DNA of 64,000 nt from Macrostomum lignano (taxonomy: Eukaryota). Below, piece after piece: positions 9,289-31,504 of the stretch. Location: NCBI GenBank assembly GCA_002269645.1, contig NIVC01000143.1, forward strand, positions 434,001-498,000, given 5' to 3'. The translations under genes and the position numbers were made by a program. The notes beneath the pieces are model-generated. The model had not been told where the DNA came from. It made no database searches and saw only the letters and a program-made list of their open reading frames with translations. Positions within the stretch are counted from its first letter, which is position 1; each line of letters opens with the position of its first letter.

Positions 9289-12200
9289 TCATGGCCATGT
9301 TTTTTGCTTTTTTTGCGGCTGCAAAATTTTCAGAACCTCGTCCAGTTTGGATTCAATGCTTACAATTCGCTGCTCCTGTCGATCTATTATATCTTCATAT
9401 TTTTGGTTTCCTTGCATCTTCGCATCGTCCAGCATCTCCTGCAAATCCGCCTTCAACTCCGCCACTTCCTTGCCTGTGTGCGCCTTCACCACGTCAAAGT
9501 CGTTTCTGTTCCACTCGATGTCGCGCAGCAAGCGGGACCGGCACCGGCGGAACTGAATCGCCTGGAACTCCAGGAATCGGTTGTAGTCTTCGGGGTAGTC
9601 ATTCTTGTCCTGCAGCCACCAAGTGGAGCGTTTCGTCTGAAATACAAAATTAAATATTAATTATAGTCTAGATGTAATCTAAAAGATCAAATGTCACCCC
9701 AAAAATATTCATAACTAATGACGGCTAAATCTTAGTAGTAGCCCAAAGCTAAAGACACCAATACAAAATTAATGACTTGCAACAAAGGGATTTCAAAAAT
9801 TCACTTACGTCATTCGAACTTCCGATATTTTCATCATCGACTTCATTTTTCGTGCGAAATCTTTTAAAACATTTTCTGAATATGAGCAAAGCAAATTTGA
9901 TAATGTACTCCAAAACACTGAATGGCGGCGGAAAAAGACTTATCTGCTGATACTCCTCCAGCATCTGACAGAACTGCCTTCTCCAGACTCCGATCGCAAC
10001 GCCGTAAATTTGTGTGGCTCGAAAATTGAACAGGGCAATCAGCAAGTTCATCATCACCACATTCACCAGGCCCATGAATAGGAATATTATGAGATAGTGA
10101 AACCACTCGTAGCCTTGCTTGATGGCGACCTTTCCTAGCTCTGTGCTGTCTGGAGAGTAGGTCAACCCGATCTGATCAAAGTTGCCGAACAGCAAATTCA
10201 GAGGTAGCGTCGCAGCTTGAATAAACGTTTCCCATCCATTTCTTAGAGTAGCCAGTTCTTCCGTAGGCGTCCAGGCGTTAGAAAACAGCAAGCATACAAT
10301 GAATACTCCAAAAGAGACGAGAATCACGAGCAAGATCGCCAAGAAAGGCAACAAGTCGTAAATAAATAAATTCCAAAGCATGTTAATCATTCGTCCAAAG
10401 ATCTCGAAGTAGCTCAGGAACGAGGTGGATCGAAAGCAGAAAAATGAGTACGACACGCATAGGATGACCTGAATGGGATAAGCATCTTCCAGCTTAAAGC
10501 CCATGCCATAATAGATCCATTTTGCGATAAGACCGGCCAGCAGAAACAGAATCGCCGAACAATCGAAAATGTTCAGCCCGTCAACAATGTAGGCAGGAGC
10601 AGATACTATGTGAGATCCGATCTTGCAGTTCTCTCTATCTTTTCTTTGTCTCACGATTTCACTCACTTCTTGCAAGCCAAACGAGAGAAGATAGGTCAAA
10701 AGAACAATATCCGCACGTAGCTGTAAAAAAGTTACGTCAATATTTATAACGTACCAACCAAAGAATACGAGGAACCCTACGAATGCGACAAAGTGGGTCC
10801 AAAACCTTGCTAGTGGAGAAGTCAGTTTCGAAATTGTCTGCCTGCAGCTGCAAGCGCTGGGGCAGCAGTGACACGGAAGACAGCAGTTTCCGGATGAACC
10901 TTGCTTTGAGCACCCTGAAATGGGCTTCCCCCACTCCTCTTTGGTTACTGAATAGATGCAGTCCGTGGCAAACAGATCCAGGTTGTCAGCTTTTTTTACC
11001 AGATCAAGCACGCTTCCGTATTCAATTTGCTCTGCTTTCCCTGCTTTCCCGTCTGTTAAGACTCGGTACGGAAACTTCGGTCCCAAACAGTTGCGATTTT
11101 CCTTCTTTGCTGCTTCTTTGTCATCTAAACTCGAATGTTTTATTTCACCTTTAATGTACTTGAACAGCCGATCTCTTTCGGGGTCCTCTGGAGCGTTAAC
11201 AAACAGCTCATTGAGTGCGTTCACTGCAATGTTTGTTATTTTGCTTTTGAGTTGAACCAGCTGTTCATGCTTGCCTTTTGCCTTGGCTCTCATCTTGACA
11301 ATCTCGGGTTCCAACTGGATGAGCAAGCTGAGGCAGCACGGAATCAGCTCGAACTGTCGAGTCAGAATCAGATCAGGCAAAATCTCCTCACATTGAAAGA
11401 ATTCGGCCAAGTCTAGAAGAGCAGACTCAGAAGTGGAATCCACATGGATCCTGTGGTTCAACATGTTCCATTTGTCAAAATGAATGTGGAATCTTTCGTC
11501 CTTCTGTAGTGTGTCAATAAGATACCGAGTAAATAGTGTCTCGGTTTCTCTCGTGACGATGTTAAGGCTCAGTGCCGCGCGAAACAGCTTTCTGGAGTCC
11601 ATTTCCAGCGCTTTCATCAGAACCATCTGGTCTGTTCTCTGCTTTCTGTTTTCTGTATTCTCCTTTATGTCTTCTCTTTTCTTCTTGGTACTATCGACAT
11701 TTGTTATGGACACCAGAGTCATTCTCGCTGCTGGCCTGTTGGGAAGTTTAAGCGCTCTTTTCGGCGGATCCAGAAGGCGCCATATGTCCGCCATCTTAAT
11801 TTCTTTTTTAGAATTTCCAGTCGCTTCAGGGCTCTGAAAGTTATTATGCTTATTTTTGTATTCACGGACAGCAAGAGTGAGGTCATATAAGTGTCCGTTT
11901 TCAAAAGCATAGTCGACGCATGTCTGCCCTGAATGCGATTCATTCCAAAGGCTCAATCCTTTTTCAAGCAGGAAAATTATATTCGCCTGGTGTCCGACTG
12001 CGCAGGCAAAGTGCAAGCACGTCTCTCCGTACTGACAGTCTTTGCAAGATTCTGGATTGGCTTTCATTTTAATCAGGCTGTCTAAAGTACTTTTAGATAT
12101 CTTTTCAATACTTTCGATCATTTTCTGATCATCTAGCTTGTACTGACCTGAAAATGTGTGAATTATGTGTGCGCCGGTCTTTGAATTGACCAAAAGTTTA

Positions 12201-14062
12201 TCGAAGTGACTCCTGGCAGTTTCGTCCGAATGAACTTTATCCAGCAGCTTGCAGAGCACTCGAGCATCCAGTTTTGTTGCGTGCAGGCAGTTGAGATTGA
12301 AAATGTTGGTAGCAGTCACATCTACTTGCTTGACAAGCAGCTTGAATCGATCCAAAATGTGCTGCTCGACTCCATCAAAGGTGAGTTGGCTCTGCATCAG
12401 CGAATGTAGCAAAGTGTTTCCTCTAATGTCGGTGCGGCAGAGATCATCTTTTGTCATCTTTTTGATAATGTCCGTAAAGTTCAGTCTTACTGGAGAAGTC
12501 CTTTTTGTTGACTCTCCGCCCGAACCAAAATTGTCCATCACGTCGATCGCCAGCTGAAGCACTGATTGATTTTTGTTATTTCGTTTGCTTAAAGTTTTAT
12601 TCATTTCAGATTTATCTCGTGGAAGCATAAGCTCTAACAATTCTCTTTTATCTGCTCTTTTTGCAGCAATGTGGAAGATTGTATTGCCTGCTTCGTCGGC
12701 AGTCTGAAGGTTTTCGACTTTTGTTATCTTAAGCAGCTCTCGAACTGTTTCCAAGCTGCAATTTTCAACAGCGTAATGAAGAACGGTAGATTGGTGCTTG
12801 TTTTTTTCCATGAGACAGTCGGGAAGGTCATTCGACCGACTTTCTGTTTGAGATTGGTCAGCAGTCTGGCCTTTGTCGCGCTGATTTTGTTCTATGGCGG
12901 CTTTTGTGGCGCTTTCTGGGCCCTGAGCCGCCCCTGGGTCAGAAGTCTGGCCTTTGTCGCGCAGACTTTTTTCTACATTTATGGCGGCTTGAACTACTTT
13001 CAGAAGCACAGAATTTTTTTGACCGCTTTCTGGGCGCTGAGCCGCTGCTGGGTTAGCAGTCAGGTCTTTGTCGCTCTTACTTTGTTCAATGGCGGCTTTG
13101 ACAGCTTCCAGAAGCACTGCATCTCTTCCTGGGCGCTGAGCCAGCGCATGCAGACATGTGCTGCCCTGCTTGTCCTTTAATTTGTACCAATTCGGCAGCA
13201 AATCTTCTAAGCGTTTAATAAGTTTGGTTGCTACTTTCTCGTTGTTGTGCTGGAGGGCCAAGTGTAGAACCGTTTCTCCCAGCTCGTTTGTCCTTTTCAA
13301 CCAATCCTTTTTGCTCCGTGAAGTCACCTGCAGCAAAAGCTTAATGACATTTATTTCGTTTTTAGCTGCGAAATGAGCAATGGTATTGCGATCGATATCT
13401 TTTTTGTCGAGTATGTCCTTTGCCTTACCAATTCCGTTCATGATCTCTGTAATAACTTTCTTTTTGCAATACTGAAGTGCATAGTGCAATACTGTTTCAT
13501 GTCTGTTGTTTTTCCATTTCCAAAAAACTCTGCACTGCACTCTGCACAAACTCTCTGAAGCGACTTTCTGCACTGTAAGCACCATTCGGCATTCATTCTT
13601 ATTTTGAGTAGCCCAGTGGGCGCAAGTGTTTCCCTTAGCGTCTCTCAACCTAAATAGGTTGACCGTTTTCACCGCTTTGAAATTGTTTTCCCAAGACTGA
13701 GCTGAGTGATAGCGGGCTGACAGATGCAAAGGAGTGACCTTGTCAAGGTCAGGACTCGTGAGGCAGTCTCCGAATTTTTTGATGAGTTGAGTAAGTGCAT
13801 CTTCTCCATTCTGATGCATGGCTGCATGATGAGCGGCTGTTCTGTGATTGTCGTCATGTAGCAGTTTCAGATTACCTGGCGCGGCAGGTTCAGTACTTAA
13901 AATGCCAAGGACGTATTCGAACTCGGCTTTACTTGCAAGTAGAAGCAGCCTCGTGCTTGGATCTTGTTCAATTGCATCTGTTGTCCATAAACTAAGGGTC
14001 TTTTTCATAGACAAAACATTTCTAGCTGCGCGCTTGAACTTTGTAGCTGCACTGTCCGCCAT
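9289..14062 (-). CDS. Ankyrin-repeat TRP cation channel, paralog 1 (~1,533 aa)
   Basis: Exons 14062-9809 (gtaagt donor, phase 0) and 9636-9289. ATG at 14062 (MADSAAT) chosen because its context matches the paralog 2 start. About 15 TxLHxA-type ankyrin motifs, six TM segments, MNLLIALF at the end of S6, TRP helix and C-terminal coiled coil. Confidence 0.9.
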
Positions 14063-14430
14063 TGAAAGAGGCTTTTGATGCCGCTGATTGACAGGTAAAG
14101 ATCTGCAAATAAGTGTTCGATACTTTTTAAAAATCGGGTGAATATCATTTATCTTGGATGCAAAGTTATTGTACAAAATTACATAACTCGTACGAGCTAC
14201 ATAAATTTTTACCATGCCATTTAATTATAAAAACACTTGCGCCCGTAAACAAAACGTCTTCGCTTTTTTACTCTGCTTCTAGAAATGCGTCAGACTCTCT
14301 CCAATTAGCAGGTTTTCTGCTACAATTCCTGTTTATGACCTTCGAATGTCACGCTCCTAAACGGTAGTACACCTGGCCATTTTCAAAGTCTACCAATGGT
14401 AGGGGATTCTTCCTGGCAATTTTCTTTACT

Positions 14431-15862
14431 GTGCCGGAATGAAGCGGAACACGAAATTCAAGAACACGGACCAATTTTTTGTTGTCACCTTCTCAAACAA
14501 GAATCAAGTCGCCGGCCCTCTGGACCGTTGAGATTTTTTCAATAAGCGCTTGTGTATTCAATGCACCCCTGTGCGCCAATCAGTACTGCGCCCCAGTTCG
14601 GCTTCTCCAAGCCTCCAAATTTCATCAGCACGTCGACCACATTACAATTACATCTGCGTCAGATCTGACTTGTTTAGTCACTGGAATTTAACTAGGCGGA
14701 TCTTTTGGACCTTCAATAGGTAGCACCAGGTAACTATGTGTGACGTTGTCAATTGAGGTGGCCCCGACAAGGGCCGTTTTAGCGAAAGCAGTGCCATTCT
14801 ATAATATTGTTAATTTGATGGTCTCGTACTCTAACGTCTGCTTATAGTAATGCCCAAGGAATTTTAACAACATTGCGTGACGTTCGTAAGCCTATGTACA
14901 ATGCGATCGATAATTTCTGTTTTTCAAGTTGGTTCTCGCGCCGGCCAATAGGAAAGCCGCGCATATATTATGCTAGCCTAAAATTAAGCCTTTGTCATGC
15001 ACCTACCCCAGCCCGCTCGTTTTCAGTCCTGTCTGGCTGGGGGGCCCGGGGTACTCTCGCTCTCTCGCTCGCTCTCTCTCTCTCACTCGCTCTCCGCCAC
15101 TGCCAAGTTTGCTCGGGCAAGTCCACTCTTAAGTCACGCCACTGTCCCGAGTGGGAATCACGCCACGCCTTCACCGTCGCCACTTCATCGCGGTGGCCCA
15201 TTAGCTATCGATCGCCATTTTTTTTGCCTGCCGCAGTGCCCAGAGTACCATAGCACGGATTCAGCACCCGTGCCACTCCCAGGCCCAGTCCCACTCTCAT
15301 ATTGCCTACAGAAACCTATAGCGAGCGGGTCTATCTGACCATAATAAATTGTTGCCATCGGCCATAACCTAACAATTACATTGACTGCGGTTAATTCTGA
15401 GTGCTACCGCTACACAATTTGCCTCCGTTGTTATTCGCCTTCGTCATTTGATCCTGGGAAAGTGTGCCTTTAAATCGTCACAATGGACACTTGCGAATTT
15501 CTAAAGTTTCGCTGATAAAGCCTCGACAGTCGGCAACCCTCAACTGCTGGACATCATCAGCCAGTCTCTCAAGTATTCCGTCACAACCACTAACAACGTC
15601 GGTACCTACAAAAGATTAAACCAGGTGACCAAGCACACTCTGTCGCGAATTTCTCTACTTTTGCTGATACTGAATACCCAGGCACCTAATTGGAAAGATC
15701 CGACCTTCTGGCAAAATCTTTGCATGTATATATATAGATGGTCCGGAGGGCTGGCGACTTGATTATTGTTTGAGAAGGTGGCAACAAAAAATCAGCCTGT
15801 GTTCTTGAATTTCTTGTGCCTGCGTTGCTTCGTTTAGGAGCAGCAAAAATATATCAGGGGGA
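14431..15862. repeat. Inverted pair of a ~100-130 bp repeat (14431-14526 and 15739-15862) enclosing degenerate repeat DNA
   Basis: caccttctcaaacaagaatcaagtcgcc at ~14486 vs ggcgacttgattattgtttgagaaggtg at ~15752. The same inverted pair recurs at 31819-31920 and 32103-32225. Confidence 0.7.
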
Positions 15863-16994
15863 TCCCTTTGCTAGTTCGACTGTTAATTGTCAGTGTTGAG
15901 ATGTGACGCTAGCAGTTAATTAAACTGCGTACTAACTGCGACCAACTTAATTCAAATGTTACTATTGGCCACTAAAATGCTAAAATTGGCCACTTATAAT
16001 TTGAGCGTATGGGTATAGCTATAGTCTCTATAATGCATTTAAAACAATTTCCAAATAGAATTGTCAAAATTTCGTGAAAATTTCGCTTTTGCCAATGTAC
16101 AATCTGTAGCACTCAGGATTTTTCACCCTCTTAAAGATGTCTTTGATCCAATGTCTTAAAGCAGACAGAATCGAGACTAATACAATATGTATCGATTCTC
16201 GGTGTCATTCAAATTCTAAAGCTGTAGCCAGAAGCAGAGATTATCGCGCCAAGTATTGACTTTTTTATTAAGTAGAAGTACATTTGTGATAAAAGGCTAA
16301 TATCCGCTTCAGAGACACAGAAATCCGCTTTACTTTTCACACCTAGGTTGGCATTCTATGTTGGCGCTCGATATGCTTTGTCTCAAACGACGTTCAAACG
16401 CAGGTAAAAAATCGGCGGGACACAAAAGGTGTTTCTTACGCACCGAGACCTCGTCTGGCCCCCACTACACCACTTATTGGTACACTGCTGCATACTCGTA
16501 CTGTACCATCAGAATTGCATGTAACCACATCAAGATATAGTGCACATTTCCAAAATATAAAATATACTCAGCACAGCCAAAAGTACAATCCCTAGCGGGA
16601 GGCGGTACTCAAGTGTGCTTGCGGTTTACCCCTAAGTTGCGTTACTTGCGGTTTGAAGACCGCTCGCTTGGGGTGCTACTTCTGACTGTTGATGAATATA
16701 AAAATGGTTTACCAGTGTTTTGTCGGTGATAGATTTCCCGAAGATTCTCATGGAGTTGTAACCTATGGCTAGAACGTCGGATTTACAAATAAAAGGTCGA
16801 CAATGGTTTGATTCTCGACCCACCCAGAACAATTTGTTTTTGATTAAATCTGCATCGCTTCAGCTCACAGCTGTCAAATGAGTACCAACATTAGCTGGGG
16901 TAATTGAGGGTGTAATTATCAGCCCTACTAATAGTATGTATGAATTTTACTGCTTTTCATAGGTAACAGGAAAATTAATGCTCTGCTGACTCAC

Positions 16995-17031
16995 CTTTAC
17001 CGCCTCAGAAGGCTTCAAGCCTAGGCGAGAC
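16995..17031 (-). other. Putative 37-nt non-coding 5'UTR exon of TRP paralog 1
   Basis: ctgcag|37 nt|gtgag on the minus strand. A homologous 37-nt exon with intact sites is at 33106-33142. Confidence 0.55.
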
Positions 17032-18015
17032 CTGCAGTATTGTATAGTAGGAAGTTCAATCGCTGTTTCTTTCTGAAAATTAAACATTGTTTTCCAAAAT
17101 TGTAGCTGATAAACATGATAAGTTTGCCATGAACTTATTAGAGCCTTAGGTGCTGTAGGTAGTTAAAAGTACAAATTCACTATAAGTACAAATACAAAAT
17201 AATATGGAAAAGAATCTTCAAGAAAATCATCCAACTTTTGATTGAGTAAAGTAATGACAAAGAACTTTCGCGAACTGCACTACACTGCACTACAGTTGCA
17301 GTTTTTGTCCAGATATTACTAAGCTACACAGCTCGCTTCGCTTAGAGCTTGTCTGAGACCGCCGCGAAATACCGTATATAAAAAGGCTGACAAAACGACA
17401 AACTAAAACCTAAAACCTCCGAAACCTAAAATCATTTTAATAAACTTTAATTTAATAGTCTACTAATAGTAGCAATATAAGAAAAATACACTATCAGTAT
17501 CATTCACAAAAATATGCTCAATAAATAAATTAACTGCGCTACTTAACTAGTCGCTAATCACTTCTTAACAGCAGTAGTTATATGTTCGGTTTCTGAGTAT
17601 TGCAATTTGATATAGGGTACTGGACGCTCTTTGCACACTCCAGTCTATTTGTTTATCCAAGAGAAATATAAAATTTTAAGAGACAATTTCGCTATAAAAT
17701 ACTTTGAATGCTGGCATTTTGTCCCTAATTACTATTTAGGACTATACTGCCAGTAATACTACAGCGATAGTTAAAATTTGACATTTAAGTATGCAAGTAT
17801 CGTCACAGTTCTATCAGGACGTAACACACTCGCGTTCTCTAAAAAAAAATAGGGAGAATTGCGCACTGATACAACCGCAACTACTTTTCGTCTATGATTG
17901 ATAATTGAGTAGAAGCGTGTAAATTTTATAAAAATTATTAAAATTATCGAGTGTATGAGAAAGTTACAGATACGTTTCTACCATATTAGTAATTTGAACA
18001 ATTTTTGTTACTCAC

Positions 18016-18103
18016 TGAAATAATGTGGATTTCAGAAGTCCCTCTCGAGCTGCTGGCGTGCAACTTGAGTTATGAGCTCGTATACTTGCAGCTCGATTTG
18101 CAC
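18016..18103 (-). other. Putative upstream 5'UTR exon of TRP paralog 1
   Basis: gtgagta donor conserved with 33911 in the duplicate. The acceptor (catcag) is less certain. Confidence 0.4.
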
Positions 18104-19574: not shown

Positions 19575-20010
19575 GCAGTGACAAACACTCCACAGAGTGA
19601 CAAAACCCTTCACAGAGTGGCAAAACCGTCCCCAGAGTGACAAGACCCTCCCTAGAAAGAAGAAACCCTTCCCAGAATGACGAACCCTCCACAGAGTGAC
19701 AAAACCCTTCACAGAGTTACAAAGCCCTCCACAAAGAGACAAACCCTCCACAGAGTGACAAAACCTTCCCAGAGTGACAAAACCTTCCCAGAGTGACCAA
19801 ACCCTCCCCAGAGTGACAAAACCCTCCCCAGAGTGACAAAACCCTCCCCAGAGTGACAAAACCCTCCCCAGAGTGACAAAACCCTCCACAGAGTGACAAA
19901 ACCCTCCCCAGAGTGACAAAACCCTCCCCATAGTGGCGAGCCTGTTCACAGTGACAAATCCATCCACAGAGAGACAAAGACTTTCCAGTGTGACAAAAAT
20001 CCCTTCCCAA
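19575..20010. repeat. 20-nt minisatellite (agagtgacaaaaccctcccc)
   Basis: Tandem units; positional homologue of the 36255-37075 array. Confidence 0.95.
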
Positions 20011-20689: not shown

Positions 20690-21170
20690 GAGATGGTCAA
20701 TCGCTGATTGGTCGGCTAGTCCATAGGGGCTTGGGCGGGGTTGGGCAGGGAGTGAGGCGGGGCGATCGCTGATTGGTCGGCTAGTCAATGGAGGTTGGGC
20801 AGGGAGTGAGGAGGGCAATCGCTGATTGGTCGGCTAGTCCATAGGGGCTTGGGCGAGGTTGGGCAGGGAGTGAGGCGGGGCGATCGCTGATTGGTCGGCT
20901 AGTCCATAGGGGCTTGGGCGGGGTTGGGCAGGGAGTGAGGCGGGGCGATCGCTGATTGGTCGGCTAGTCAATGAAGGTTGGGCAGGAAGTGAGGAGGGCA
21001 ATCGCTGATTGGTCGGCTAGTCCATAGGGGCTTGGGCGGGGTTGGGCAGGGAGTGAGGCGGGGCGATCGCTGATTGGTCGGCTAGTCTATGGAGGTCGGG
21101 CAGGGAGTGAGGAGGGCAATCGCTGATTGGTCGGCTAGTCCATAGGGGCTTGGGCGAGGTTGGGCAGTCC
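20690..21170. repeat. 65/53-nt tandem repeat containing CCAAT and GC boxes
   Basis: Eight copies of ctgattggtcggctagtc spaced 65,53,65,65,53,65,53 nt. Confidence 0.92.
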
Positions 21171-21210
21171 ACTAGCGATATGTTTGTAGTACACAATAAA
21201 CTGAATAGAG

Positions 21211-21571: not shown

Positions 21572-21691
21572 CTGCATGGATAAGTTGGCAGTGTGGGTGA
21601 CAATATTTATTTATTACGCATATTATACTCATATTGAATTTAAATGCATTACAAGTGTTATTTGCCTTGTGGATCTAACAGGGTGACAGTA

Positions 21692-22395
21692 ACACAGCAA
21701 CTGAGGATCTGCAACGCTAGCGCAGCAACTGAGGATCTGGGGGCTGGTGGCCCAGCAACTGAGGATCTGGGAGGCTGGTGCAGCAACTGAGGATCTGGGA
21801 GGCTGGTGCAGCAACTGACGATCTGAGAGGCTGGTGCAGCAACTGAGGATATGGGAGGCTGGTGGCCCAGCAACTGAGGATCTGGGAGGCTGGTGGCCAG
21901 CAACTGAGGATATGGGAGACTGGTGGCCCAGCAACTGAGGATCTGGGAGGCTGGTGGCCAAGCAACTGAGGATCTGGGGGGCTGGTGGCCAAGCAACTGA
22001 GGATCTGGGAGGCTGGTGGCCCAGCGCCCAGCAACTGAGGATCTGGGAGGCTGGTAGCCAATCAACTAAGGATCTGGGGGCTGGTGGCCCAGCAACTGAG
22101 GATCTGGGAGGCTGGCCCAGCAACTGAGGATCTGGGAGGCTGGCCCAGCAACTGAGGATCAGGGAGGCTGGTGGCCCAGCAACTAAGGATCTGGGAGGCT
22201 GGCCCAGCAACTAAGGATCTGGGAGGCTGGCCCAGCAACTGAGGATCTGGGAGGCTGGCCCAGCAACTAAGGATCTGGGAGGCTGGCCCAGCAACTAAGG
22301 ATCTGGGAGGCTGGCCCAGCAACTAAGGATCTGGGAGGCTGGCCCAGCAACTAAGGATCTGGGAGGCTGGCCCAGACACTGAGGATCTGGGAGGG
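21692..22395. repeat. 28-31-nt minisatellite (cagcaactgaggatctgggaggctggcc)
   Basis: Tandem units; same family at 37675-38642 and 39283-39500. Confidence 0.95.
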
Positions 22396-23139: not shown

Positions 23140-23345
23140 CAACTATCTACCATTTAATTTTTGTATATTTGCAATGATTTTTTATCAGATCATTTTTCCC
23201 TCGCGGCTTCCTATGGGAGGAAGGCTTTCACAATTCGTTAATTGGCCAGTTCGATCCGGAGATTAGTCAAATTGCTCGACCTAATGAAGTCAATGGTCGG
23301 ATTCCTCGCGAACAAATACTCGACTTTGAGGCCAAGGCTAAGGTG
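23140..23345 (+). pseudogene. Decayed duplicate of MOGS exon 4 with flanking intron sequence
   Basis: ttttccctcgcggcttcctatgggaggaaggctttcacaattcgttaattggccagttcgatccggagattagtc is nearly identical to 3705-3780, with internal deletions. The upstream intron tail and AG/GT sites were also copied. Confidence 0.9.
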
Positions 23346-23544
23346 AGCTTTTGTTTATATTTATTTTTGAGTCTTTTGAGCCTTTTGAGCCTTCAATCGC
23401 TTTATTTCATCAGCTGTTTGAGTTGAATAAAATTTAATTTGTTAAAAATAAATGCGTGTTTTAAAACATTCTCATGCCTTTTCGTTTATCTTTCAACGAT
23501 GTAATTTTTGCGTTTCTTTTCATCAAGCAATTAGAAAAGTATTT

Positions 23545-24290
23545 ATCTTCCTGGTGTCATCGCCTGATTTGATTAATTTGGCGTACGAGTACAAGCATGT
23601 GGTTTCTCTGTGTTGATGCAAATATCGAGTGCATGTTGCCTTTTTTCTGGGTGGATCTTCCCATACGGCACTGTTTAGAAAAGTTGCTTTTTTACCGCTC
23701 TTTCTGCATCTTTCCTCATGCTGGAAGTTTATCCTGCGAAATTCGTGTTCCTTGACGTAAAACTTACACATACGACCTCATGATGAGTTTACAGGGAGGC
23801 TTGACTGGTAGCGCTAATGAGAAAAACATAGTTGTCGCTTTCTCCCGTTTGTAGATAGCCCCATCAATGCAGATATCCATACGTTCTCTCCCTTCATAAC
23901 CGTGTAGTTCTTTCGTGAGCTCTCCATTGATTCGCAGATAGTCTTTGATTTCTCTAATGTTGGCTTACTACCCTCTTGCAGTTTTCTATGGTTCCAGGAT
24001 CCTGAAGTCCCATGACCATCCGGTCTCTCAGCTGGTAATCAATATAGCTTTTGCAAAATCGTTCGAAATTACACCTGGATAAGATTTCTTTTATCGCTAC
24101 ATACCAGTCTGATGCTTTCGCCATCAGCTTGATTGCGTAGAAAAAACGCTGTCTTTCGAATATTTCATTTGTCTGTCCATTAATGAAGCCTTCAAAAGCT
24201 TTAATGATCTCCTTGGCGTTGTCCTTGCCAGCAAGCAATGATGCGGAAAGCTATCCACTATCTTGAGCGTCTCCATGCTCAGGCAAACAG
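23545..24290 (-). mobile_element. Degenerate Ty3/gypsy gag fragment (copy 2, duplicate of ~7310-7770)
   Basis: NEIFERQRFF...CNFERFCKSYIDYQLRDRMVMGLQDP (gag) and CKFYVKEHEFRR. Nucleotide alignment to copy 1 is evident. Confidence 0.75.
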
Positions 24291-24792
24291 TTGAGCAAAC
24301 AGAGACTTAGCCTTCTCACTTAAGAGAGTAAAGCCTATATATATTCGGTATATTCTTGGGTATACCATGGAAATTCTTGATATGCAATATACAATAAAAC
24401 GAAAGTTTTAAATCAAGTCCGTAGCAGAGAATTGTTCGTACTGATACGAACATTAATAAGTACTCTGAGAGCACACTCTGTGTACAGGTCACGAAATAGA
24501 CTGAATCACAAAACACGTGCGTTTAAATTACAAGAATAACTAACTTTAACGCGTCTACAATCCCAACACACGTCTACATCTTTTACATGTATTGCTATAT
24601 TGACGGACGTCAATGCCAAATTTAGCTACATTTAGTGCAAGCCAGATAATACGTTTTTACGTGGTATGCTTTTCCTTATTAATATTTTTTCCTTTATGAA
24701 ATACCCAGCTAAGCAGCGTAGTACACCTCTTCCGTTCAATTTCAACATGAAGGTACGAGAGCAGAGGCAGAAGCGGCTTTATGAGTTGATTG

Positions 24793-24951
24793 TCATAATC
24801 CCGTGACCTCTCCGTTCTCATACACATCCAGAAGGCGGGCTCTGTCTCTGTCAGACACTCGTCCGTATGGACCCCAGGGTTCATCCTTATCATCTTCGTC
24901 ACCGATTTCTTCTTCTTCATCTCCTGCATCTTTTGACATCTTGTCGCCCAT
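24793..24951 (-). mobile_element. Possible Tc1/IS630-like transposase N-terminal relic
   Basis: 52-aa frame ending YGRVSDRDRARLLDVYENGE, resembling the first HTH helix of such transposases. Lies in DNA unique to duplicate 2. Confidence 0.3.
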
Positions 24952-26770
24952 TCTATTTGTAATATCTTTTCAAAAATGAATTCGGTGTATGCTCTCATAC
25001 ATAAAACTTCTGTCTTCTGGAAGCGAACTTCATGGGGGGCACTCCGTTTAAAGAGGAATATATAGAGAGCCTCAGACAGTTATACAGCATTTGTTGTTAG
25101 CTTGAGAGGGGGCTGCTGAAGATTGATACAGTGTTTTACAGTACACTAAAAACAGCGCACCAAAAATGTTGTGTTGGAATTGAATGCAGCATGCCGAAAT
25201 TGAATAGGAAATCTACATGTAGGAGCAAGTTGTGTCCATAGACAGAATGAACGCCCTTACTATGGCATGAAATAGAATATCCAATTGCCGATATTGAATG
25301 CCGCTTGCCGAATTCGAATGACGGTTGAAATACATGTAGCTAAATATGGAAGAATGAATTGAATGTCAGCATTCTGAAATAGAAAGCAAGTGTCGTTGAA
25401 ATTGAACGGAAAAGGTACAATGATACCGTTGCTAATATATAATTTTCAACAGAATTAGACTAAGTAAATTCTACGAATACTTAAAAGTAGGTTGCCACAT
25501 GCCCAAATAAACCAATAAAAACAGCTTGAATTTTTGAAAAGTCGATAAAAATGATTATGGCTGTTATATTTAGAGAAATAACTAAACAGCTCTATCTATA
25601 AACTTTTTTAGCTGCTGCGAAAACTTTTAAAACATTAAAAATTGTGAAAATGTCAAAAATGTCAAAAAATGTTAAGCTGCAAAGCAGTACCAGCTGTTTT
25701 AGCAGGTTATAAAGTGTTTACAATTCTCAGGTTTCGCAACTAAGATATGGCTGAAGATATTTAATGTTTTCTTGAGGATCTTAAGGATAAATTATTAAGG
25801 ATCGTTAAGGGCGCCATTAAATATGCCCAAACTTCGTGTGATCACAGGGCGTATACACTCAGCAACACTGAAAAGCTTCCACGTCTATGCCAGGAACCAT
25901 TCGGGCCTACGGAGCATTCGCGCAAGGGTGGACGCTTTTCAATATTGTTCAGTGCATATAAACTTTCTTTTGTAGATCGGTCGTGTGGTTTGACAGCAGT
26001 GAAAATCAGCCTTCGCTAACTGATTGTTGCCGATAAATTGGTAGATAATTTTTATTTTTAAACCGTTTCCGGTTCTGTACGTAAGGTTATTCTGATTATG
26101 GAGTACGGTAGATATATTCATGAAACCTCACAATATCAGATATACTATAATCGCAACTGAAAATATTGTGTAAGATTTTTGAAACCACAGCAAACTTATT
26201 GTTTTCTACGAGTACATGTATATAGCTGTTCTAAGAATCGTTATACGCATCATGTTCATTGGTACTAAAGGTTAGCTCTGAGAAAATATAATTATAATAT
26301 AAATACGAGTTATCTCGAGCGAGTTCAAAAATTTTAAAGATAAAATGTCTTTGGCAGCTCTTTTTGTAGTTTTAGGAAAATGTTTTAAAGAATAAAAAAC
26401 TTTCTTAAGAATGAGTAACACTGCCGAAGCTGCTGCGATAGAAAGCAAAAAAATCAATTCCGAAATAAAAAAGGAATCCTACGATGTGGTTTTGGGCTTT
26501 TGATTACGCACTTAGCTAGAATGTTGTGGTGTACAATTCTAATTTTGAAGACACTCGCCACCTGTTTTGAATCAAAGTTAGCATGCCAATTATTGTATTC
26601 TCATGAAATTTGTGAACCAAGTACATTTTGCTGTACTACCACTAATGTTTTAATATACTACTTACCTACTGCAAAAACTGTCTTTAAAATATTCGCGGTG
26701 TTGTGGAAAAATGTTTTAGAAATCGATAGTTACTGACTTTTTTTCATAAATTACTCCACCATCGTCAGTT

Positions 26771-26783
26771 TCATGTCGATTTT

Positions 26784-26828
<45 letters not shown>

Positions 26829-29800
26829 GGCTTAGAAAGATTCAGAAGCTGGTCCAGCTTGGATTCAAGCTTGGATTGAATGCTTATAATTTGCTGCTCC
26901 TGTCTGTTAAATCTATCTTCATTTCTTTGTTCTTGTTTAATGGTTGCACCCTCCAGCATCTGCTCAAATTCCGCTTTTAACTCTGACAGTTCTCTGCCCG
27001 TGCGCGCCTTCACCACCTCGAAGTCGTTTCTGTTCCACTCGGTGTCGAGCAGCAGGCGGGACCGGCACCGGCGGAACTGTGTCGCTTGGAACTTCAGGAA
27101 CCGGTTGTACTCTTCAGGGTAGTCCTCCTTGTCTCTCCGCCACCATTTGTATGTTTTCTAAAATACAAAAAGCAAAACTTTCTCAGTAGTATTTGTAACA
27201 GATACACGTGTAACAGATCATGTGTAGCCCTAGGTATATTCATTACTAAGGGCAGCTAAAATCGATTTTTATGTTCCATAATCCGCTTTCAGTTTGACCC
27301 CATTTTATAATATAAACCTCAATACAAAATAAATGACCGACAGCAAAAATGTTAAAAAGTCACTTACGTTCTTTTTGTCAGCAGTGACTGTATCAGTGAC
27401 TGCATTCTTCGTGGAAAACTTTTTAGAACATGGCCTGACTATGAACAGACTAAATTTTACAATGTACTCCAGAAAACTCAATGGCGGTGGAAGTACAGTC
27501 AACTGCTGATACTCGTCCAACATCTGGACGAACCGCTTTCTCCAGACCCCGATCGCCACGCCATAAATCTGTGTGACTCGCAAATTGAACAGTGCAATCA
27601 GCAAGTTCATCATCACAACATTCACCAGGCCCATGAATAAGAATACTACGAAGTAGTTAAACCATTCATATCCTTGCTTGATGGCGACTTTTCCTAGCTC
27701 TGTGCTGTCTGGAGAGTAGGTCAACCCGATCTGATCAAAGTTGCCGAACAGCAAGTTGAAAGGTATCGTGGCAGCTTGAATAAACGTTTCCCATCCGTTG
27801 CTTAGAGTAGCGATTTCTTCTGTTGGAGTCCAAGCGTTAGAAAACAGCAAGCATACAATGAATACTCCAAAACAGCAGAAAATCACAAACAAGACCACCA
27901 GGAAAGGCAGCAAATCGTAAACAATTAGATTCCAAAGCATACTAATCATTGGCCCAATGGTTTCGAAGTACGTCAGAAACGTGACGGATCGAAAGCAGAA
28001 CAGTGAGTACGACACGCACAGGACAACTTGACTGGGATAAGCATCCTGCAGCTGAAAGCCCATCCCATAATATAACCATCTTGCAATAAGGCCGGCCAGT
28101 AGAAACAGAATCGCCAGAACATCGAAAATGTTTAGCCCATCGACAAGATAGGCGGGAACAGATCGTACATGAGAACCGATCTTGCAGTTCTCTCTAGCTT
28201 TTCGTTGTCTCCAGATTTCACTCAGTTCTTGCAAGCCAAAGGAAAAAAGATAGGCGACAAGGAGAATGTCCCACTTTGGTTCTAAGAAGCTTTCCTCGAA
28301 ATTAATAACGTACCAACCAAAGAATATGAGGAACCCTACGAATGCGACAAAGTGGGTCCAAAACCTTGCCAGTGGAGAATCCGGTCTCGAAATTTTTGGC
28401 CTGCAGCTGCAAGCGCTGGGGCAGCAGTCGTACGGAAGACAGCAGTTTCCATAAAAACCTCGCTTTGAGCACTCTGAAATGGGCTGCCTCCACTCCTCTT
28501 TGGTGACTGAATAGATGCAGTCGGTGGCAAACAGATCAGAGTTGTCAGCTTTTTCCACCAGCTCAAGCACGCTTCCGTATTGAATTTTCTCTGGATTCCC
28601 GTCTTTAAAGACTCGGTACGGAAACTTCGGTCCCAAACAGTTGCGATTTTCCTTTTTTTCTGCTGCTTCGTCATCTAAACTCAAATGCTTCATTTCACCT
28701 TTAATGTACTTGAACAGCAGCTCGAACTCGATTATGTCAGCATTAACAAATAGCTCATTGAGTGCGTTCACTGCAATGTTCGTGATCTTGCTTTTTAGTT
28801 GAAGCAGCTGCTCATGCTTTCCCTTTGCCTTGGCTCTCATCTTGATGATCTCGGGGTCCAGCTGGATGAGCAAGCTGAGGCAGCACGGAATCAGCTCGAA
28901 CTGTCGAGTCAGAATCAGGTCAGGCAGGATCTCATCACGATGAAAGAATGTGGCCAAGTCTAGAAGCGCCAACTCAGAAGTGGAATCCACATGAGTCAGG
29001 TGCTTGAACGTGTTCAGTCTGATAAAATCTCTCTGAATTTCTTCATCATTCGTTACTGTGTCGATGAAATACTGAGTAAATTGCCTCTCGGTTTCTCTCG
29101 TAATGATGTTCAGGCTGAGTGCCGCACGAAACAGCTTTCTGGAGTTCATTTCCAGCGCTTTGATCAGAACTATCTTGTCTGTTTGTTGCTTTCCTGTACT
29201 ATCTGTCTGCTGTCTGTTGTCTGTTTCTTGCTTCTTTGTACTATCTGTCTGCTGTCTGTTGTCTGTTTCTTGCTTCTTTGTACTATCTGTCTGCTGTCTG
29301 TTGTCTGTTTCTTGCTTCTTTGTACTATCTGTCTGCTGCCTGTTCTCTGTTCTCTGTGCGTCTCTATCATTTGTTATGGACACCAGGGTCATTCTCGCTG
29401 CTGACCTCGTGGGAAGTTTAAGCGCTCTTTTCGGCGGATCTAGAAGGCGCCATATGTCGGTCATTTTGATTTTTTGAGAGGTATCAGAGCTTGAAATCTG
29501 GTTATTTTTGTAATTCCGGACAACTTCAAGGAGGTTGTATAAGTTTCCGCTTTCAAAGGCGTAATCAACGCATGTCTGCCCTGAATGCGATTCGCTCCAA
29601 AGACTCAATCCTTTTTCAAGCAGGAAAATTATATTTTCCTGATGTCCGTAAGCGCAAGCAAAGTGCAAGCAGGTCTCTCCGTGCTGCGAGTTTTCGCAAG
29701 ATTGTAGCTTGACTTTTTTTTTAAGCAAGCTATCTTGAGAATCTTTTGGTGCAAATTTTTCAATAAGGGCCAACATTGACGGCTTTTTATATTCTGCTTC

Positions 29801-31504
29801 GAGTAGATTGTACTGACCTGAAAATGTGTGAATTATGTGAGCGCCAGTCGTTGAATTGACCAAAAGTTTATCGAAGTGACTCTTGGCAGTTATGTCCGAA
29901 TGAACTTTATCCAGCAGCTTGCGGAGCACCAGAGCATCCAGTTTTGTTGCGTGCAGGCAGTTCAGACTGAGATTGTTGGTGGCTTCCACATCTACTCCCT
30001 TCTCGACGAGTAGCTTGAATCGAATCAAAAGGTGCTGCTCGAAACCAGCATATGTTAATTTGCTCTGCATCAGCGAATGTAGCAAAGTGTTTCCTCCTAT
30101 GTCGGTGCGGCAGAGCTCATCCGTTTTATCCGTTTTTATCTTTTCGATAATGTTCTTAATGTTCAGTTCCTCAAAATTGTCCATCACGTCAATTGCCAGG
30201 TGAAGCACAGATTGATTTTTGTTATTTCGTCTGCTTAAAGCTTTTTTCATCTCATCTTTAACAAGTGAAGGCATATTCTTCAATAATTCTCTTTTATCTG
30301 CTCTTTGTGCAGCAATGTGGAAGATTGTGTTGCCCGCTCTGTCGGCAGTCTGAAGGCTTTGACCTTTCACCTTGGTAAGCAGCTCTCCGACAGCTTCCAA
30401 ACTGCAATTTTCAACGGCGTAATGAAGAACTGTGGACTTGTGCTTGTTCTCATCCATGAGAAAGTCGATTTCAGTCGGCGGACTCTGACTCTGAGATGGG
30501 TCAGCAGTGAGATTTTTGTCGAGCTGAATTTGTTTAATGGCGGCTTCAAGAGCTTTCAGAAGCACTGCATCTCTTTTTGGACGCTGAGCCACCGCATGCA
30601 GACATGTGTTGCCCTGCTTGTCTTTCAATTTATACCAATTTGGCAGCGATTTTTCTAATAAGAGTTCAATAAGTTCGGTTGCTACCTTCTCGTTGTTGTG
30701 CCGAAGGGCCAAGTGTAGAACCGTTTCTCCCAGCTTGTTTGTAGAATTCATCCGTAGAACTTCGCTCTTTGATGAATTTGTCATCTGCGCCACAAATTGA
30801 ATGGCATCGATTTCGTTTTTAGCAGCAAAATGAGCCGTGGTATTGCCGTCGATATCTTTTCCGCCAAGAATGTCCTTTGAATTGCCTATTTCAGTCATAA
30901 TCTCTTTAATATCATCTTCGGTGCAATACTGAAGTACATGGTGCAACACTGTTGCATTTCTATTGTTCTTCCATTTCAAGCAAGCTGTAGAAGCTATGTT
31001 CATCACTTTAAGCACCATTTGGCCGTCTTTAGAATTTTGAGCAGCCCAGTGAGCGCAAGTGTCGCCGTTAGCGTCTTTCAACCTAAATAGGTTGACGTTT
31101 TTCACAGCTTTGAAGGTCTGTTCCCAAGACTGAGCTGAGTGATAGCGCGCTGACAGATGCAACGGAGTGATTTCGTCAAGGTCAGGACTGGTGAGGCAGT
31201 CTGGTCCGAATCTCTCGATCTCGATAAGTTTAGCGAGTGCAGCTTCTCCCTCCTTCTTCGACTCCATGGCTGCATAATGAGCGGCTGTTCTGCGATTTTC
31301 GTCACGAAACAGCTGCAACTTCGATTGCCCTGTACTTTCTTCTTTTAAAATTGTATCTACTTCTTTGAATTTAGATTGATTTGCACATAGATACAGCCTC
31401 TTGCTTGGATCTTCAGCCTGATCTATTTTCCAAACACTGATGGTCCTTTGTAAAATAATTACTTTTTTAGCGGCGTCACTTAATCTCATAGGATTATTCG
31501 CCAT
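26771..31504 (-). CDS. Ankyrin-repeat TRP cation channel, paralog 2 (~1,507 aa)
   Basis: Exons 31504-27368 (gtaagt donor, phase 0) and 27157-26771. Same architecture and intron position as paralog 1, plus an internal 14-aa tandem repeat and C-terminal Q13. Confidence 0.9.

What the first reader, a model, noticed from the sequence alone, without database searches (positions are those of the whole stretch)
9289..31504. TRP channels combining a long ankyrin array with a TRPM/TRPS-type channel core
Seen: about 15 ankyrin motifs, then LFATDCIYSVTKEEW, PLARFWTHFVAF, FLAILLVILVSFGV, NVVMMNLLIALF, VWRRQF..LEEY..LFPPPFS and a C-terminal coiled coil. Established: TRPM and TRPS lack ankyrin repeats and carry MHR domains, while long ankyrin arrays typify TRPA1 and TRPN. 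By eye the pre-S1, S5, S6 and post-TRP-helix segments look like TRPM (HxCVQxLLxxxW, PxVKFW, FLFxLxVxLxSFGV, NLLIAMF, WKFQRY..I.EY..P.LPPPF), not TRPA1. Inference: a chimeric or deeply diverged ANK-TRPM-like family, with a non-canonical TRP box (WRRQF/WRKRF) that may alter gating.
Basis: partly seen in the sequence, partly recalled or inferred. Interest (0 to 1): 0.8.

Follow-up and report, generated by a model that had tools for sequence, protein, structure and literature searches.

The report
Flatworm ankyrin-bearing TRPM-like channel genes
Two neighbouring genes of the flatworm Macrostomum lignano encode ion channels that join a long ankyrin-repeat arm to a TRPM-type pore; the design is real but already published for the parasite drug target TRPM_MCLZ, so these are a new, expanded free-living branch of a known class.

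Summary
The window is Macrostomum lignano DNA with two intact tandem paralogues on the minus strand: gene A (9289-14062, 1533 aa) and gene B (26771-31504, 1507 aa), 63% identical, each with two exons. Each encodes about 15-17 ankyrin repeats, a helical linker, S1-S6, a TRP helix and a C-terminal helical/coiled-coil exon.

Without the ankyrins, the 60 best solved-structure sequence matches and the top 50 fold matches are all TRPM. There is no SLOG/MHR1-2 domain. The linker connects to TRPM MHR3/4 only through intermediate relatives.

The schistosome meclonazepam target TRPM_MCLZ was described in 2023-2026 as a SLOG-less, ankyrin-bearing 'TRPM-like' channel found in all parasitic flatworms.

In NJ trees the window genes group with TRPM_MCLZ orthologues, apart from all SLOG-bearing TRPMs (75-86% bootstrap). 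They form a much more divergent subfamily with longer ankyrin arrays, heavily expanded in M. lignano and, as far as I found, not discussed in the literature.

Most likely function, by inference only: tetrameric Ca2+-permeable cation channels, probably sensory.

Verdict: new variant of a known kind, of moderate interest.

The parts
9809..14062 (-). Gene A, exon 1 (CDS from Met 'MADSAATKF' to the splice donor): ankyrin array, linker, S1-S6, TRP helix
   Evidence: Uninterrupted ORF. The start is homologous to the starts of gene B and P0010. The donor GAC|GTAAGT was verified, and the C-terminal half is 99.8% identical to BOX15_Mlig026070g1.
9637..9808 (-). Gene A intron (172 nt, GT..AG)
   Evidence: The only splice combination that reproduces deposited protein P0003.
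9289..9636 (-). Gene A, exon 2: 'WWLQDKNDYPEDYNRFLEFQAIQFRR' helix plus C-terminal coiled-coil-like helix and stop codon
   Evidence: 100% identical to P0003 residues 461-575. The region is shared with the Y/Z groups (hhalign 81.6%, E = 1e-5).
11888..13960 (-). Gene A ankyrin-repeat array, with a gene-A-specific insertion of about 100 aa at roughly 12836-13147
   Evidence: Pfam Ank_2 E = 4.6e-28, 6 stretches. The insertion shows as a gap in the alignment to gene B.
10826..11629 (-). Gene A helical linker (diverged MHR4-like) with ILPDLILTRQFELIP, pre-S1 LFATDCIYSVTKEEW and a Cys-rich loop
   Evidence: Homologous to the gene B linker. Coordinates checked by translation.
9866..10825 (-). Gene A S1-S6, pore and TRP helix (VWRRQF...LFPPPFS)
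   Evidence: phmmer/jackhmmer core envelope. Motif conservation.
27368..31504 (-). Gene B, exon 1 (CDS from Met 'MANNPMRL' to the splice donor)
   Evidence: Uninterrupted ORF. The donor AAC|GTAAGT is at the position homologous to gene A's.
27158..27367 (-). Gene B intron (210 nt, GT..AG)
   Evidence: Homologous position and phase to the gene A intron. It joins to 'KTYKWWRRDKEDYPEEYNRFLKFQATQFRR'.
26771..27157 (-). Gene B, exon 2: C-terminal helices, poly-Q tail, stop codon
   Evidence: tblastn matches to the P0001/P0002/P0003 C-termini; translation.
29498..31408 (-). Gene B ankyrin solenoid (about 15-17 repeats, residues ~33-669)
   Evidence: Pfam, AlphaFold model, Foldseek matches to ankyrin-1, NOMPC, AnkB and DmTRPA1.
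29183..29497 (-). Gene B spacer: conserved 'IWRLLDPPKRALKLPTR' motif, then a low-complexity 42-bp tandem repeat (QQTDSTKKQETDNR x4)
   Evidence: Tandem Repeats Finder 29175-29351, 4.2 copies, 95% matches. The repeat is absent from gene A.
28385..29182 (-). Gene B helical linker (diverged MHR4-like), pre-S1 helix and Cys-rich loop (28379-28450)
   Evidence: AlphaFold pLDDT 80-95 over most of it. Whole-model Foldseek alignments to TRPM span about 660-700 columns. hhalign: X linker vs Z linker 94.5%; Z linker vs TRPM MHR3/4 98.4%.
27425..28384 (-). Gene B S1-S4 voltage-sensor-like domain, S5-pore-S6 and TRP helix (VWRKRF...LPPPLS)
   Evidence: TRPM2 E = 2e-18. Kept features: S2 E, S3 N..D, S4 R, pore FGNFD, TRP W. 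dN/dS 0.31.

Best explanation
The window carries two tandemly duplicated, intact M. lignano genes. Each encodes a ~1500-residue subunit of a flatworm-specific 'TRPM-like' cation channel class. In this class the TRPM N-terminal SLOG/MHR1-2 ligand-binding domain is absent and an ankyrin-repeat solenoid takes its place. The MHR4-type helical linker, the S1-S6 core, the TRP helix and C-terminal helices are kept. The published prototype is TRPM_MCLZ, the schistosome meclonazepam target. The window genes are not its orthologues. They belong to a far more divergent subfamily ('X') that has longer ankyrin arrays, a different exon structure and a linker too diverged for Pfam to recognise, and that has expanded into many lineages in M. 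lignano. Inferred mechanism, not shown for these genes: four subunits form a Ca2+-permeable non-selective cation channel. Gating is controlled through the S1-S4/TRP-helix cavity, where the acidic/amide positions of the TRPM Ca2+ site and the S4 arginine are kept. The ankyrin arm serves as a cytoplasmic regulatory, tethering or partner-binding module, and the C-terminal helices assist assembly. The large lineage-specific expansion in a free-living worm suggests a sensory receptor repertoire.
For: Identity and integrity: the window matches M. lignano protein BOX15_Mlig026070g1 at 99.8-100%. Both genes have long uninterrupted ORFs, canonical splice sites at homologous positions and dN/dS of 0.48 overall and 0.31 in S1-TRP. 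TRPM-type core. No SLOG domain: with positive controls. Linker: relatives P0060/P0078 hit Pfam PF25508 (MHR3/4) at 28.3/29.3 bits against a cutoff of 27, with no SLOG. hhalign gives Y linker vs TRPM 99.1% (E = 2e-18), Z linker vs TRPM 98.4% and X linker vs Z linker 94.5% (E = 8e-8). Clade: the exhaustive profile search finds about 30 full-length representatives at E < 1e-80. Every labelled member of the ANK clade is a flatworm. In the NJ trees X is monophyletic at 88-100%, X+Xd at 99-100%, and all ANK groups separate from all SLOG-bearing TRPMs at 75-86%. Z equals TRPM_MCLZ: S1 H-x3-H, the S4 R-T-L-F/Y/H variants by taxon, and the two Opisthorchis channel copies all match the published description (PMC12861061). 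Prototype properties (ankyrin N-terminus, no SLOG, agonist-evoked Ca2+ signal in HEK293, neuron and muscle expression) come from PMC10788528 and PMC11731825. Conserved S2/S3/S4/pore/TRP residues.
Against: No functional or expression data exist for these two genes. The X core is only marginally closer to Z than to canonical TRPM in profile-profile scores (273 vs 267). The X linker and C-terminus show no direct significant match to TRPM. The trees are distance-based and unrooted, lack labelled TRPS and TRPC/TRPN outgroups, and contain long branches, so grouping X with TRPM_MCLZ could partly reflect long-branch attraction. Several published TRPM_MCLZ pocket residues differ in X (second S1 His, S2 Tyr to Phe, TRP Tyr to Phe). 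Ion selectivity cannot be read from the FGNFD filter.
Confidence: 0.78

Rival explanations
1. X is an ancient, independent TRP lineage (sister to TRPM+TRPS) that kept the ancestral ankyrin repeats. It is not specifically related to TRPM_MCLZ and survives only in flatworms.
For: In the midpoint-rooted NJ tree the ANK groups lie outside all SLOG-bearing TRPMs. The X core is about equally distant from Z and from canonical TRPM. Himmel 2020 infers that ankyrin repeats were lost before the TRPM-TRPS split, which implies an ankyrin-bearing ancestor.
Against: Every labelled member is a flatworm, so this reading needs many independent losses elsewhere. X shares the RQF[D/E]xIP linker (94.5%) and the C-terminal motif (81.6%) with Z/Y, not with TRPM. 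Y and Z retain a recognisable MHR3/4 segment, which implies descent from an MHR-bearing TRPM-type ancestor.
Confidence: 0.12
2. The ankyrin array was acquired independently in X and in TRPM_MCLZ (convergent replacement of SLOG), so the shared architecture is not homologous.
For: Repeat number differs greatly: the linker motif lies about 600 residues from the N-terminus in Z and 660-1140 residues in X. Exon structures differ: 2 exons here, with ankyrins and channel in one exon, against 3 exons in TRPM_MCLZ with the channel in exon 3.
Against: ANK-group monophyly at 75-86%. The post-ankyrin linker and C-terminal motifs are shared. A single loss or replacement is more parsimonious.
Confidence: 0.06
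3. These are TRPN (NOMPC)- or TRPA1-type channels whose transmembrane similarity to TRPM is superficial.
For: A long ankyrin array. With ankyrins included, NOMPC scores close to TRPM for the full-length protein and tops the family-profile search. The N-terminal model matches NOMPC and DmTRPA1.
Against: That score comes from the ankyrins. The non-ankyrin NOMPC match is 95.7 bits against 255-262 bits for TRPM1/3. With ankyrins removed, no TRPN, TRPA or TRPC chain is among the 60 best hits. The top 50 fold matches are all TRPM.
Confidence: 0.02
4. The genes are pseudogenes, or an assembly or annotation fusion of an ankyrin gene with a channel gene.
For: Several database models of this family are fragmentary or chimeric (for example P0002, P0014, P0019, P0040).
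Against: In the raw sequence the ankyrins, linker and channel lie in one uninterrupted ORF of 1379-1418 codons in both copies. dN/dS is below 1 in every region. The same architecture recurs in dozens of paralogues and in the expressed TRPM_MCLZ.
Confidence: 0.02

Closest known systems
TRPM_MCLZ (Schistosoma mansoni Smp_333650 and its 63 reported orthologues in trematodes, cestodes and monogeneans): the 'TRPM-like' meclonazepam-activated channel
   Same: N-terminal ankyrin repeats in place of SLOG/MHR1-2. A TRPM-like S1-S6 core with a TRP helix. No C-terminal enzyme domain. Restricted to flatworms. Same side of the ANK/SLOG split in the trees (75-86%). Shared RQF[D/E]xIP linker and FLxFQA..R C-terminal motifs. 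S2 Glu and S4 Arg of the VSLD pocket are kept.
   Different: The window genes are distant paralogues, not orthologues (about 20% identity to the trematode and cestode TRPM_MCLZ members in alignment A3). They have about 15-17 ankyrin repeats, and the N-terminal region is up to ~1100 residues in sister X members against ~600 in TRPM_MCLZ. Their linker is no longer detected by Pfam PF25508. They have two exons with ankyrins and channel in one exon, against three exons. Several pocket residues differ. They are multi-copy and heavily expanded in M. lignano. Their pharmacology is unknown.
Canonical TRPM channels (TRPM1-8, invertebrate alpha/beta TRPM, flatworm TRPM_PZQ)
   Same: Closest solved relatives by sequence and by fold. 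Pre-S1 helix, VSLD with the Ca2+-site positions (E, N, D), NLLIA(L/M)F in S6, TRP tryptophan, and the post-TRP 'PPP' re-entrant segment.
   Different: No SLOG/MHR1-2. No Pfam-detectable MHR3/4 in the window proteins. No NUDT9H or kinase domain. TRP box WR(R/K)(Q/R)F instead of WKFQR. They fall outside all SLOG-bearing TRPMs in the trees.
TRPN/NOMPC and TRPA1
   Same: A long N-terminal ankyrin solenoid joined through a helical linker to a six-helix TRP channel. Overall shape is probably similar. TRPA1 has a similar repeat number and also a C-terminal coiled coil.
   Different: The transmembrane core is far less similar (NOMPC 95.7 bits vs TRPM 255-262 bits). No TRPA1 chain appears among the best sequence or fold matches of the core. 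The resemblance is one of architecture, not of descent.

Membership tests
Canonical TRPM | N-terminal SLOG / MHR1-2 domain (Pfam LSDAT_euk) | tested here: not met
   No hit at E <= 0.1 in either window protein. The same scan finds it at E = 1e-21 to 1e-111 in control TRPMs.
Canonical TRPM | MHR3/4 region (Pfam PF25508 'TRPM2-like domain') | tested here: inconclusive
   No direct Pfam hit, and hhalign of the X linker against TRPM is not significant. The link is indirect: X linker vs Z linker 94.5%, Z linker vs TRPM 98.4%, Y linker vs TRPM 99.1%. Relatives P0060/P0078 pass the PF25508 cutoff. Whole-model Foldseek alignments to TRPM include the linker.
Canonical TRPM | TRPM-type S1-S6 core and TRP helix | tested here: met
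   The 60 best PDB sequence hits are all TRPM. The top 50 Foldseek hits are all TRPM, TM-score about 0.6.
Canonical TRPM | C-terminal rib/pole coiled coil (TRPM_tetra) | tested here: inconclusive
   The family-profile match to TRPM1 runs on to residue 1258. There is no Pfam TRPM_tetra hit, and hhalign of the C-termini against TRPM is not significant.
Canonical TRPM | Phylogenetic position among SLOG-bearing TRPMs | tested here: not met
   The ANK groups separate from all SLOG-bearing sequences at 75-86% NJ bootstrap. The tree is unrooted and has no TRPS or outgroup.
Flatworm ANK-bearing 'TRPM-like' class (TRPM_MCLZ type) | N-terminal ankyrin repeats, no SLOG, TRPM-like channel core, no enzyme domain | tested here: met
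   The definition is taken from PMC11731825 and PMC12861061.
Flatworm ANK-bearing 'TRPM-like' class (TRPM_MCLZ type) | Same clade as TRPM_MCLZ orthologues | tested here: met
   75-86% NJ bootstrap. Shared linker (94.5%) and C-terminal motif (81.6%). Support is moderate and distance-based.
TRPM_MCLZ orthologue group proper | Published pocket signature (S1 H827/H831, S2 Y864/E868, S4 R943 plus F/H/Y946, TRP Y1117) and the 3-exon gene with the channel in exon 3 | tested here: not met
   Only the first His, the Glu and the Arg are kept. The second His, the S2 Tyr and the TRP Tyr differ. The gene has two exons, with ankyrins and channel together.
TRPM_MCLZ orthologue group proper | Activation by (S)-meclonazepam | not testable with these tools
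   Needs heterologous expression.
TRPN (NOMPC) | About 29 ankyrin repeats and a TRPN-type core | tested here: not met
   15-17 repeats. The non-ankyrin match is 95.7 bits, against 255-262 bits for TRPM1/3.
TRPA1 | TRPA-type core following 14-18 ankyrin repeats | tested here: not met
   The repeat number is compatible, but no TRPA1 chain is among the 60 best sequence hits or the 50 best fold hits of the core.
TRPS | SLOG N-terminus and Nudix C-terminus | tested here: not met
   Neither domain is detected. No labelled TRPS sequence was available for the tree.

The most novel reading that the evidence does not exclude
The X subfamily (N-terminal regions of ~660-1140 residues before the linker motif, consistent with ankyrin arrays well beyond the 15-17 repeats modelled for gene B, on a TRPM-like chassis, with dozens of paralogues in a free-living flatworm) may be a convergent, NOMPC-like 'spring-and-channel' mechanosensor family, or more broadly a large lineage-specific sensory receptor repertoire. 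Its origin by loss of SLOG from an ANK+SLOG TRPM ancestor would be traceable through the flatworm TRPM2/PZQ-like channels, which still carry both ankyrins and SLOG. If so, flatworms rebuilt the ankyrin-TRP design that TRPM and TRPS are thought to have lost.
Probability: 0.15. Interest if true: 0.7.

Novelty: new variant of a known kind. Interest (0 to 1): 0.38.

Why it matters
The textbook statement that TRPM and TRPS channels lack ankyrin repeats (Himmel 2020) comes from surveys that did not sample Platyhelminthes. The parasitology literature has since described one exception, TRPM_MCLZ, as a single-copy drug target. This window shows that in a free-living flatworm the same SLOG-less, ankyrin-bearing design has radiated into several deep subfamilies with many paralogues and much longer ankyrin arms. 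That gives TRP evolution a natural series for studying N-terminal domain replacement: ANK+SLOG, then short ANK plus a recognisable MHR4, then long ANK plus a diverged linker. It gives the anthelmintic-target field a set of natural variants of the TRPM_MCLZ ligand pocket. It also offers a tractable model animal, with RNAi and transgenesis available (my own knowledge, not checked here), in which to find the native function of this class.

Tried and rejected
1. A single-sequence consensus ankyrin HMM found only 8-9 weak repeats, so I replaced it with the AlphaFold model and Foldseek. A later regex count is only indicative.
2. The word-indexed homologue searches reached little: 9 Macrostomum hits and 2 hits with the Y/Z alignment, probably swamped by low-complexity words. 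Only the exhaustive profile search exposed the family. Its profile accidentally contained some ankyrin columns, so the many-stretch ankyrin-only hits were ignored.
3. Three Pfam calls exceeded the residue limit.
4. Direct hhalign of the X linker and the X C-terminus against TRPM was not significant. I therefore claim MHR4 homology only through intermediates and the fold match, and I do not claim homology of the coiled coil.
5. I could not root the tree or include labelled TRPS, TRPC or TRPN. I judged that adding an outgroup to an NJ tree with such long branches would not be decisive.
6. TRPN and TRPA membership was considered and rejected on core scores.
7. Pseudogene or fusion artefact was rejected on ORF integrity and dN/dS.
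8. Papers that might have described the class but do not: Bais & Greenberg 2016 and 2020, Rohr 2022, Marchant 2024, the planarian TRPM paper, Himmel 2020 and Morini 2026.


Full report
WHAT IS THERE

The region holds two long minus-strand ORFs, 9749-14215 (1488 aa) and 27305-31504 (1399 aa). Each is followed downstream by a short ORF rich in heptad-like sequence. The two proteins are 63% identical over their whole length.

tblastn of database relatives shows that the window is Macrostomum lignano DNA. Protein BOX15_Mlig026070g1 (P0003) matches gene A at 99.8-100% in two blocks. This fixes a single 3' intron: exon 1 ends at 9809 (GAC|GTAAGT) and exon 2 starts at 9636 (TTTCAG|ACG). Gene B has the homologous donor at 27368 and acceptor at 27157.

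The gene models are:
- Gene A: 14062..9809 + 9636..9289, 1533 aa. The true start is the Met homologous to those of gene B and P0010.
- Gene B: 31504..27368 + 27157..26771, 1507 aa.

Both are intact and under purifying selection: dN/dS is 0.48 overall and 0.31 in S1-TRP, with dS 0.39. Ankyrins, linker and channel lie in one uninterrupted exon, so the architecture is read directly from the DNA and is not an annotation fusion. No further copy lies in the window. The neighbours are ordinary eukaryotic genes: a GH63 glucosidase, a CD36-family protein and LRR proteins.

DOMAIN ANATOMY

Pfam finds only ankyrin families in the window proteins (Ank_2 E = 5e-28 and 2e-24). It finds no SLOG, no PF25508 (MHR3/4), no TRPM_tetra and no Nudix.

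An AlphaFold model of gene B residues 1-700 has moderate confidence over residues ~70-500 and low confidence after about 500. It shows 15-17 helix hairpins. It matches ankyrin-1, AnkB, NOMPC and 17-repeat Drosophila TRPA1 over about 650 columns.

After a low-complexity spacer comes a helical region of about 265 residues, then S1-S6 and a TRP helix. In gene B the spacer contains a 42-bp coding tandem repeat. A model of gene B residues 775-1399, built from a 37-sequence family alignment, is good (pLDDT 78.7, pTM 0.76).

IS THE CORE TRPM-LIKE?

Yes, on three lines of evidence.
- With the ankyrins removed, the 60 best PDB sequence hits are all TRPM: TRPM2 2e-18, then M3, M7, M1, M8, M4 and M5. No TRPN, TRPC, TRPA or TRPV chain is among them.
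- With a profile of the whole family, TRPM1 and TRPM3 match in one stretch from the linker through the C-terminal helices at 255-262 bits. NOMPC's non-ankyrin match is 95.7 bits; its high total comes from ankyrins.
- The top 50 Foldseek matches of the core model are all TRPM (TRPM3 E = 5e-14, TM-score about 0.6). The alignments span about 660-700 columns, so they cover the whole query including the linker.

Residue-level comparison shows that the X family keeps the TRPM S2 Glu, an acidic residue at the TRPM 'Q' position, the S3 Asn..Asp, the S4 Arg, an F-G-x-F-D pore motif, N-LLIALF in S6 and the post-TRP PPP segment. The TRP tryptophan is invariant across the 37-sequence ANK-clade alignment. 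The TRP box reads WR(R/K)(Q/R)F instead of WKFQR.

THE WIDER FAMILY

An exhaustive profile search of 1.84 billion representatives gave 6258 hits. About 30 representatives match the whole linker-core-C-terminus profile at E < 1e-80 (group X). After that there is a sharp drop. Cluster look-ups show that all six X representatives with usable names are M. lignano. One further protein is labelled 'Kangiellaceae bacterium MAG' on a 5.1-kb contig and is evidently eukaryotic contamination.

The next tier is mixed.
- Canonical TRPMs have SLOG + PF25508 + Ion_trans.
- Other proteins carry ankyrins and have no SLOG:
  - Xd (M. lignano).
  - Y (M. lignano). Its members P0060/P0078 have ankyrins plus the C-terminal half of PF25508, just above the curated cutoff, plus Ion_trans.
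  - Z, found in Opisthorchis, Schistocephalus, Fasciolopsis, Dicrocoelium, Paragonimus, Echinostoma, Hymenolepis, Protopolystoma and Cichlidogyrus. This covers trematodes, cestodes and monogeneans.

Every labelled member of these ankyrin-bearing groups is a flatworm.

LINKER HOMOLOGY

Profile-profile comparison gives these results:

| Comparison | Probability | E-value |
|---|---|---|
| Y linker vs TRPM MHR3/4 | 99.1% | 2e-18 |
| Z linker vs TRPM MHR3/4 | 98.4% | 7e-15 |
| X linker vs Z linker | 94.5% | 8e-8 |
| X linker vs TRPM directly | not significant | - |

Together with the fold match, this makes the window proteins' linker a strongly diverged MHR4-type domain. The C-terminal region is shared between X and Y/Z (81.6%, E = 1e-5) but shows no significant match to TRPM in this test.

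PHYLOGENY

The first analysis was an NJ tree of 76 S1-TRP cores (290 columns, 200 bootstraps). The second set used a score-based distance with stricter trimming or group removal (100 bootstraps each).

| Grouping | First analysis | Alternative analyses |
|---|---|---|
| X monophyletic | 88% | 99-100% |
| X+Xd | 99.5% | 99-100% |
| Y | 100% | - |
| Z | 77% | - |
| Y+Z (+P0080) | 49% | 86-92% |
| All ANK groups vs all SLOG-bearing TRPMs (including the flatworms' own TRPM2/PZQ-like channels) | 86% | 75-84% |

Limits: the trees are distance-based and unrooted, contain no labelled TRPS and no TRPC/TRPN outgroup, and have long branches. Profile-profile scores of the cores put X only marginally nearer to Z (273) than to canonical TRPM (267), whereas Y-Z is clearly close at 430-465.

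WHAT IS ALREADY KNOWN

[quoted passage not shown] Those surveys did not sample Platyhelminthes (Himmel 2020; Morini 2026).

The parasitology literature has nevertheless described this architecture.
- Park et al. (PMC10788528) cloned Sm.TRPM_MCLZ (Smp_333650). It was previously classed as 'TRPM7-like', has 'multiple ankyrin-like repeats' at the N-terminus, and gives Ca2+ signals in HEK293 cells when activated by (S)-meclonazepam.
- Sprague et al. (PMC11731825) state that it is 1380 aa, has three exons and is expressed in neurons and muscle. They state that it 'lacks the NH2-terminal MHR1/2 or SLOG domain' and instead has ankyrin-repeat-like modules.
- Rohr et al. (PMC12861061) report 63 orthologues in trematodes, monogeneans and cestodes. 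They place it in a clade next to the TRPMs and suggest calling the group 'TRPM-like' because of the N-terminal ankyrin repeats. They also note duplicated channel exons 3a/3b in Opisthorchis, Clonorchis and Paragonimus.

My Z group is this orthologue set. It has the S1 H-x3-H signature. Its S4 motif is R-T-L-F in the cestodes and the monogenean and R-T-L-Y in Dicrocoelium and Fasciolopsis. The O. viverrini model P0040 contains two channel domains with N and H at that site.

None of the papers I could read treats this class in Macrostomum or any other free-living flatworm. This is absence within the searchable library, not proof of absence.

INTERPRETATION

What appears to be undescribed is the branch to which the window genes belong. 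Subfamily X is very divergent. In M. lignano it has expanded into many lineages that are less than 50% identical to one another. The region N-terminal to the linker motif is 660-1140 residues, against about 600 in TRPM_MCLZ. Ankyrins and channel are encoded in a single exon. The window-type proteins also carry a Cys-rich pre-S1 loop (CCLPxxCCPSACSC).

MECHANISM

Shown: nothing experimental for these two genes.

Inferred from homology to TRPM structures and from the expressed prototype: a tetrameric Ca2+-permeable non-selective cation channel. Gating would run through the S1-S4/TRP-helix cavity, whose Ca2+-site-like acidic/amide residues and S4 Arg are conserved. The ankyrin arm would replace the SLOG nucleotide-binding module as the cytoplasmic regulatory or tethering element. 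The scale of the expansion in a free-living animal points to sensory use. Which stimulus gates the channel is unknown.

VERDICT

I rate this a new variant of a known kind, of moderate interest.

Noticed in passing
related protein P0025 (NCBI MEE4247282.1): A 1537-aa X-type ankyrin + TRPM-like channel is deposited as a 'Kangiellaceae bacterium' MAG protein on a 5.1-kb contig. It is almost certainly a eukaryotic (flatworm-like) contig mis-binned into a bacterial genome. It also hints that X-type genes exist outside M. lignano.
   Followed up: partly
related proteins P0114 (Clonorchis) and P0152 (M. lignano): Flatworm TRPM2/PZQ-like channels carry a few ankyrin repeats (Pfam Ank_2 32.9 bits, cutoff 27.3) upstream of the SLOG domain. 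An ANK+SLOG+MHR3/4+channel (+NUDT9H) arrangement could be the intermediate from which the SLOG-less class arose.
   Followed up: partly
window 28379-28450 (gene B) and about 10826-10890 (gene A), minus strand: A cysteine-rich loop just before S1 (GNCCLPYDCCPSACSC, 7 Cys in 16 residues) with low model confidence. It occurs in the window genes and their closest paralogues P0010, P0002 and P0003 (P0001 has a slightly altered version). It could be a palmitoylation cluster, a metal site or a redox/electrophile sensor.
   Followed up: no
window 29175-29351 and about 26783-26824 (gene B): A 42-bp in-frame tandem repeat (4.2 copies, 95% matches) encodes QQTDSTKKQETDNR repeats between the ankyrins and the linker. 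It is absent from gene A. Gene B also ends in a run of 14 glutamines.
   Followed up: partly
window about 12836-13147 (gene A): A gene-A-specific, internally repetitive insertion of about 100 aa (AAIEQ..DK..TA..P units) between ankyrin repeats. It shows as a gap in the alignment with gene B.
   Followed up: no
window 19577-19978, 20700-21167, 21695-22394; also about 34.7-35.7, 37.5-38.6, 39.5-40.8, 45.9-46.4 and 54.8-56.2 kb: Many minisatellite arrays (20-bp, 28-bp, 118/183-bp and other units) fill the space between and beyond the two genes. They generate long spurious ORFs in several frames on both strands.
   Followed up: partly
window 1061-5483 (+), 41320-42336 (-), 46613-51649 (-), 57413-60503 (-): Neighbouring genes: a multi-exon GH63 mannosyl-oligosaccharide glucosidase, a CD36-family protein, a 1678-aa coiled-coil-rich ORF with no Pfam hit, and two LRR_6 (RNI-like) proteins.
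   Followed up: partly
related proteins P0115, P0123, P0131, P0145 (ENA contigs, organism unknown): A well-supported group (100% bootstrap) of TRPM-like channels from unlabelled ENA assemblies. The one member scanned with Pfam (P0115) has no SLOG and no ankyrin hits; the N-termini of the other three were not scanned. This may be another N-terminal domain replacement on the TRPM chassis.
   Followed up: no
related protein P0040 (O. viverrini KER32702.1): The deposited 1906-aa model contains two tandem channel domains. This matches the alternative exons 3a/3b reported by Rohr et al. 2026, so the model probably fuses mutually exclusive exons.
   Followed up: partly
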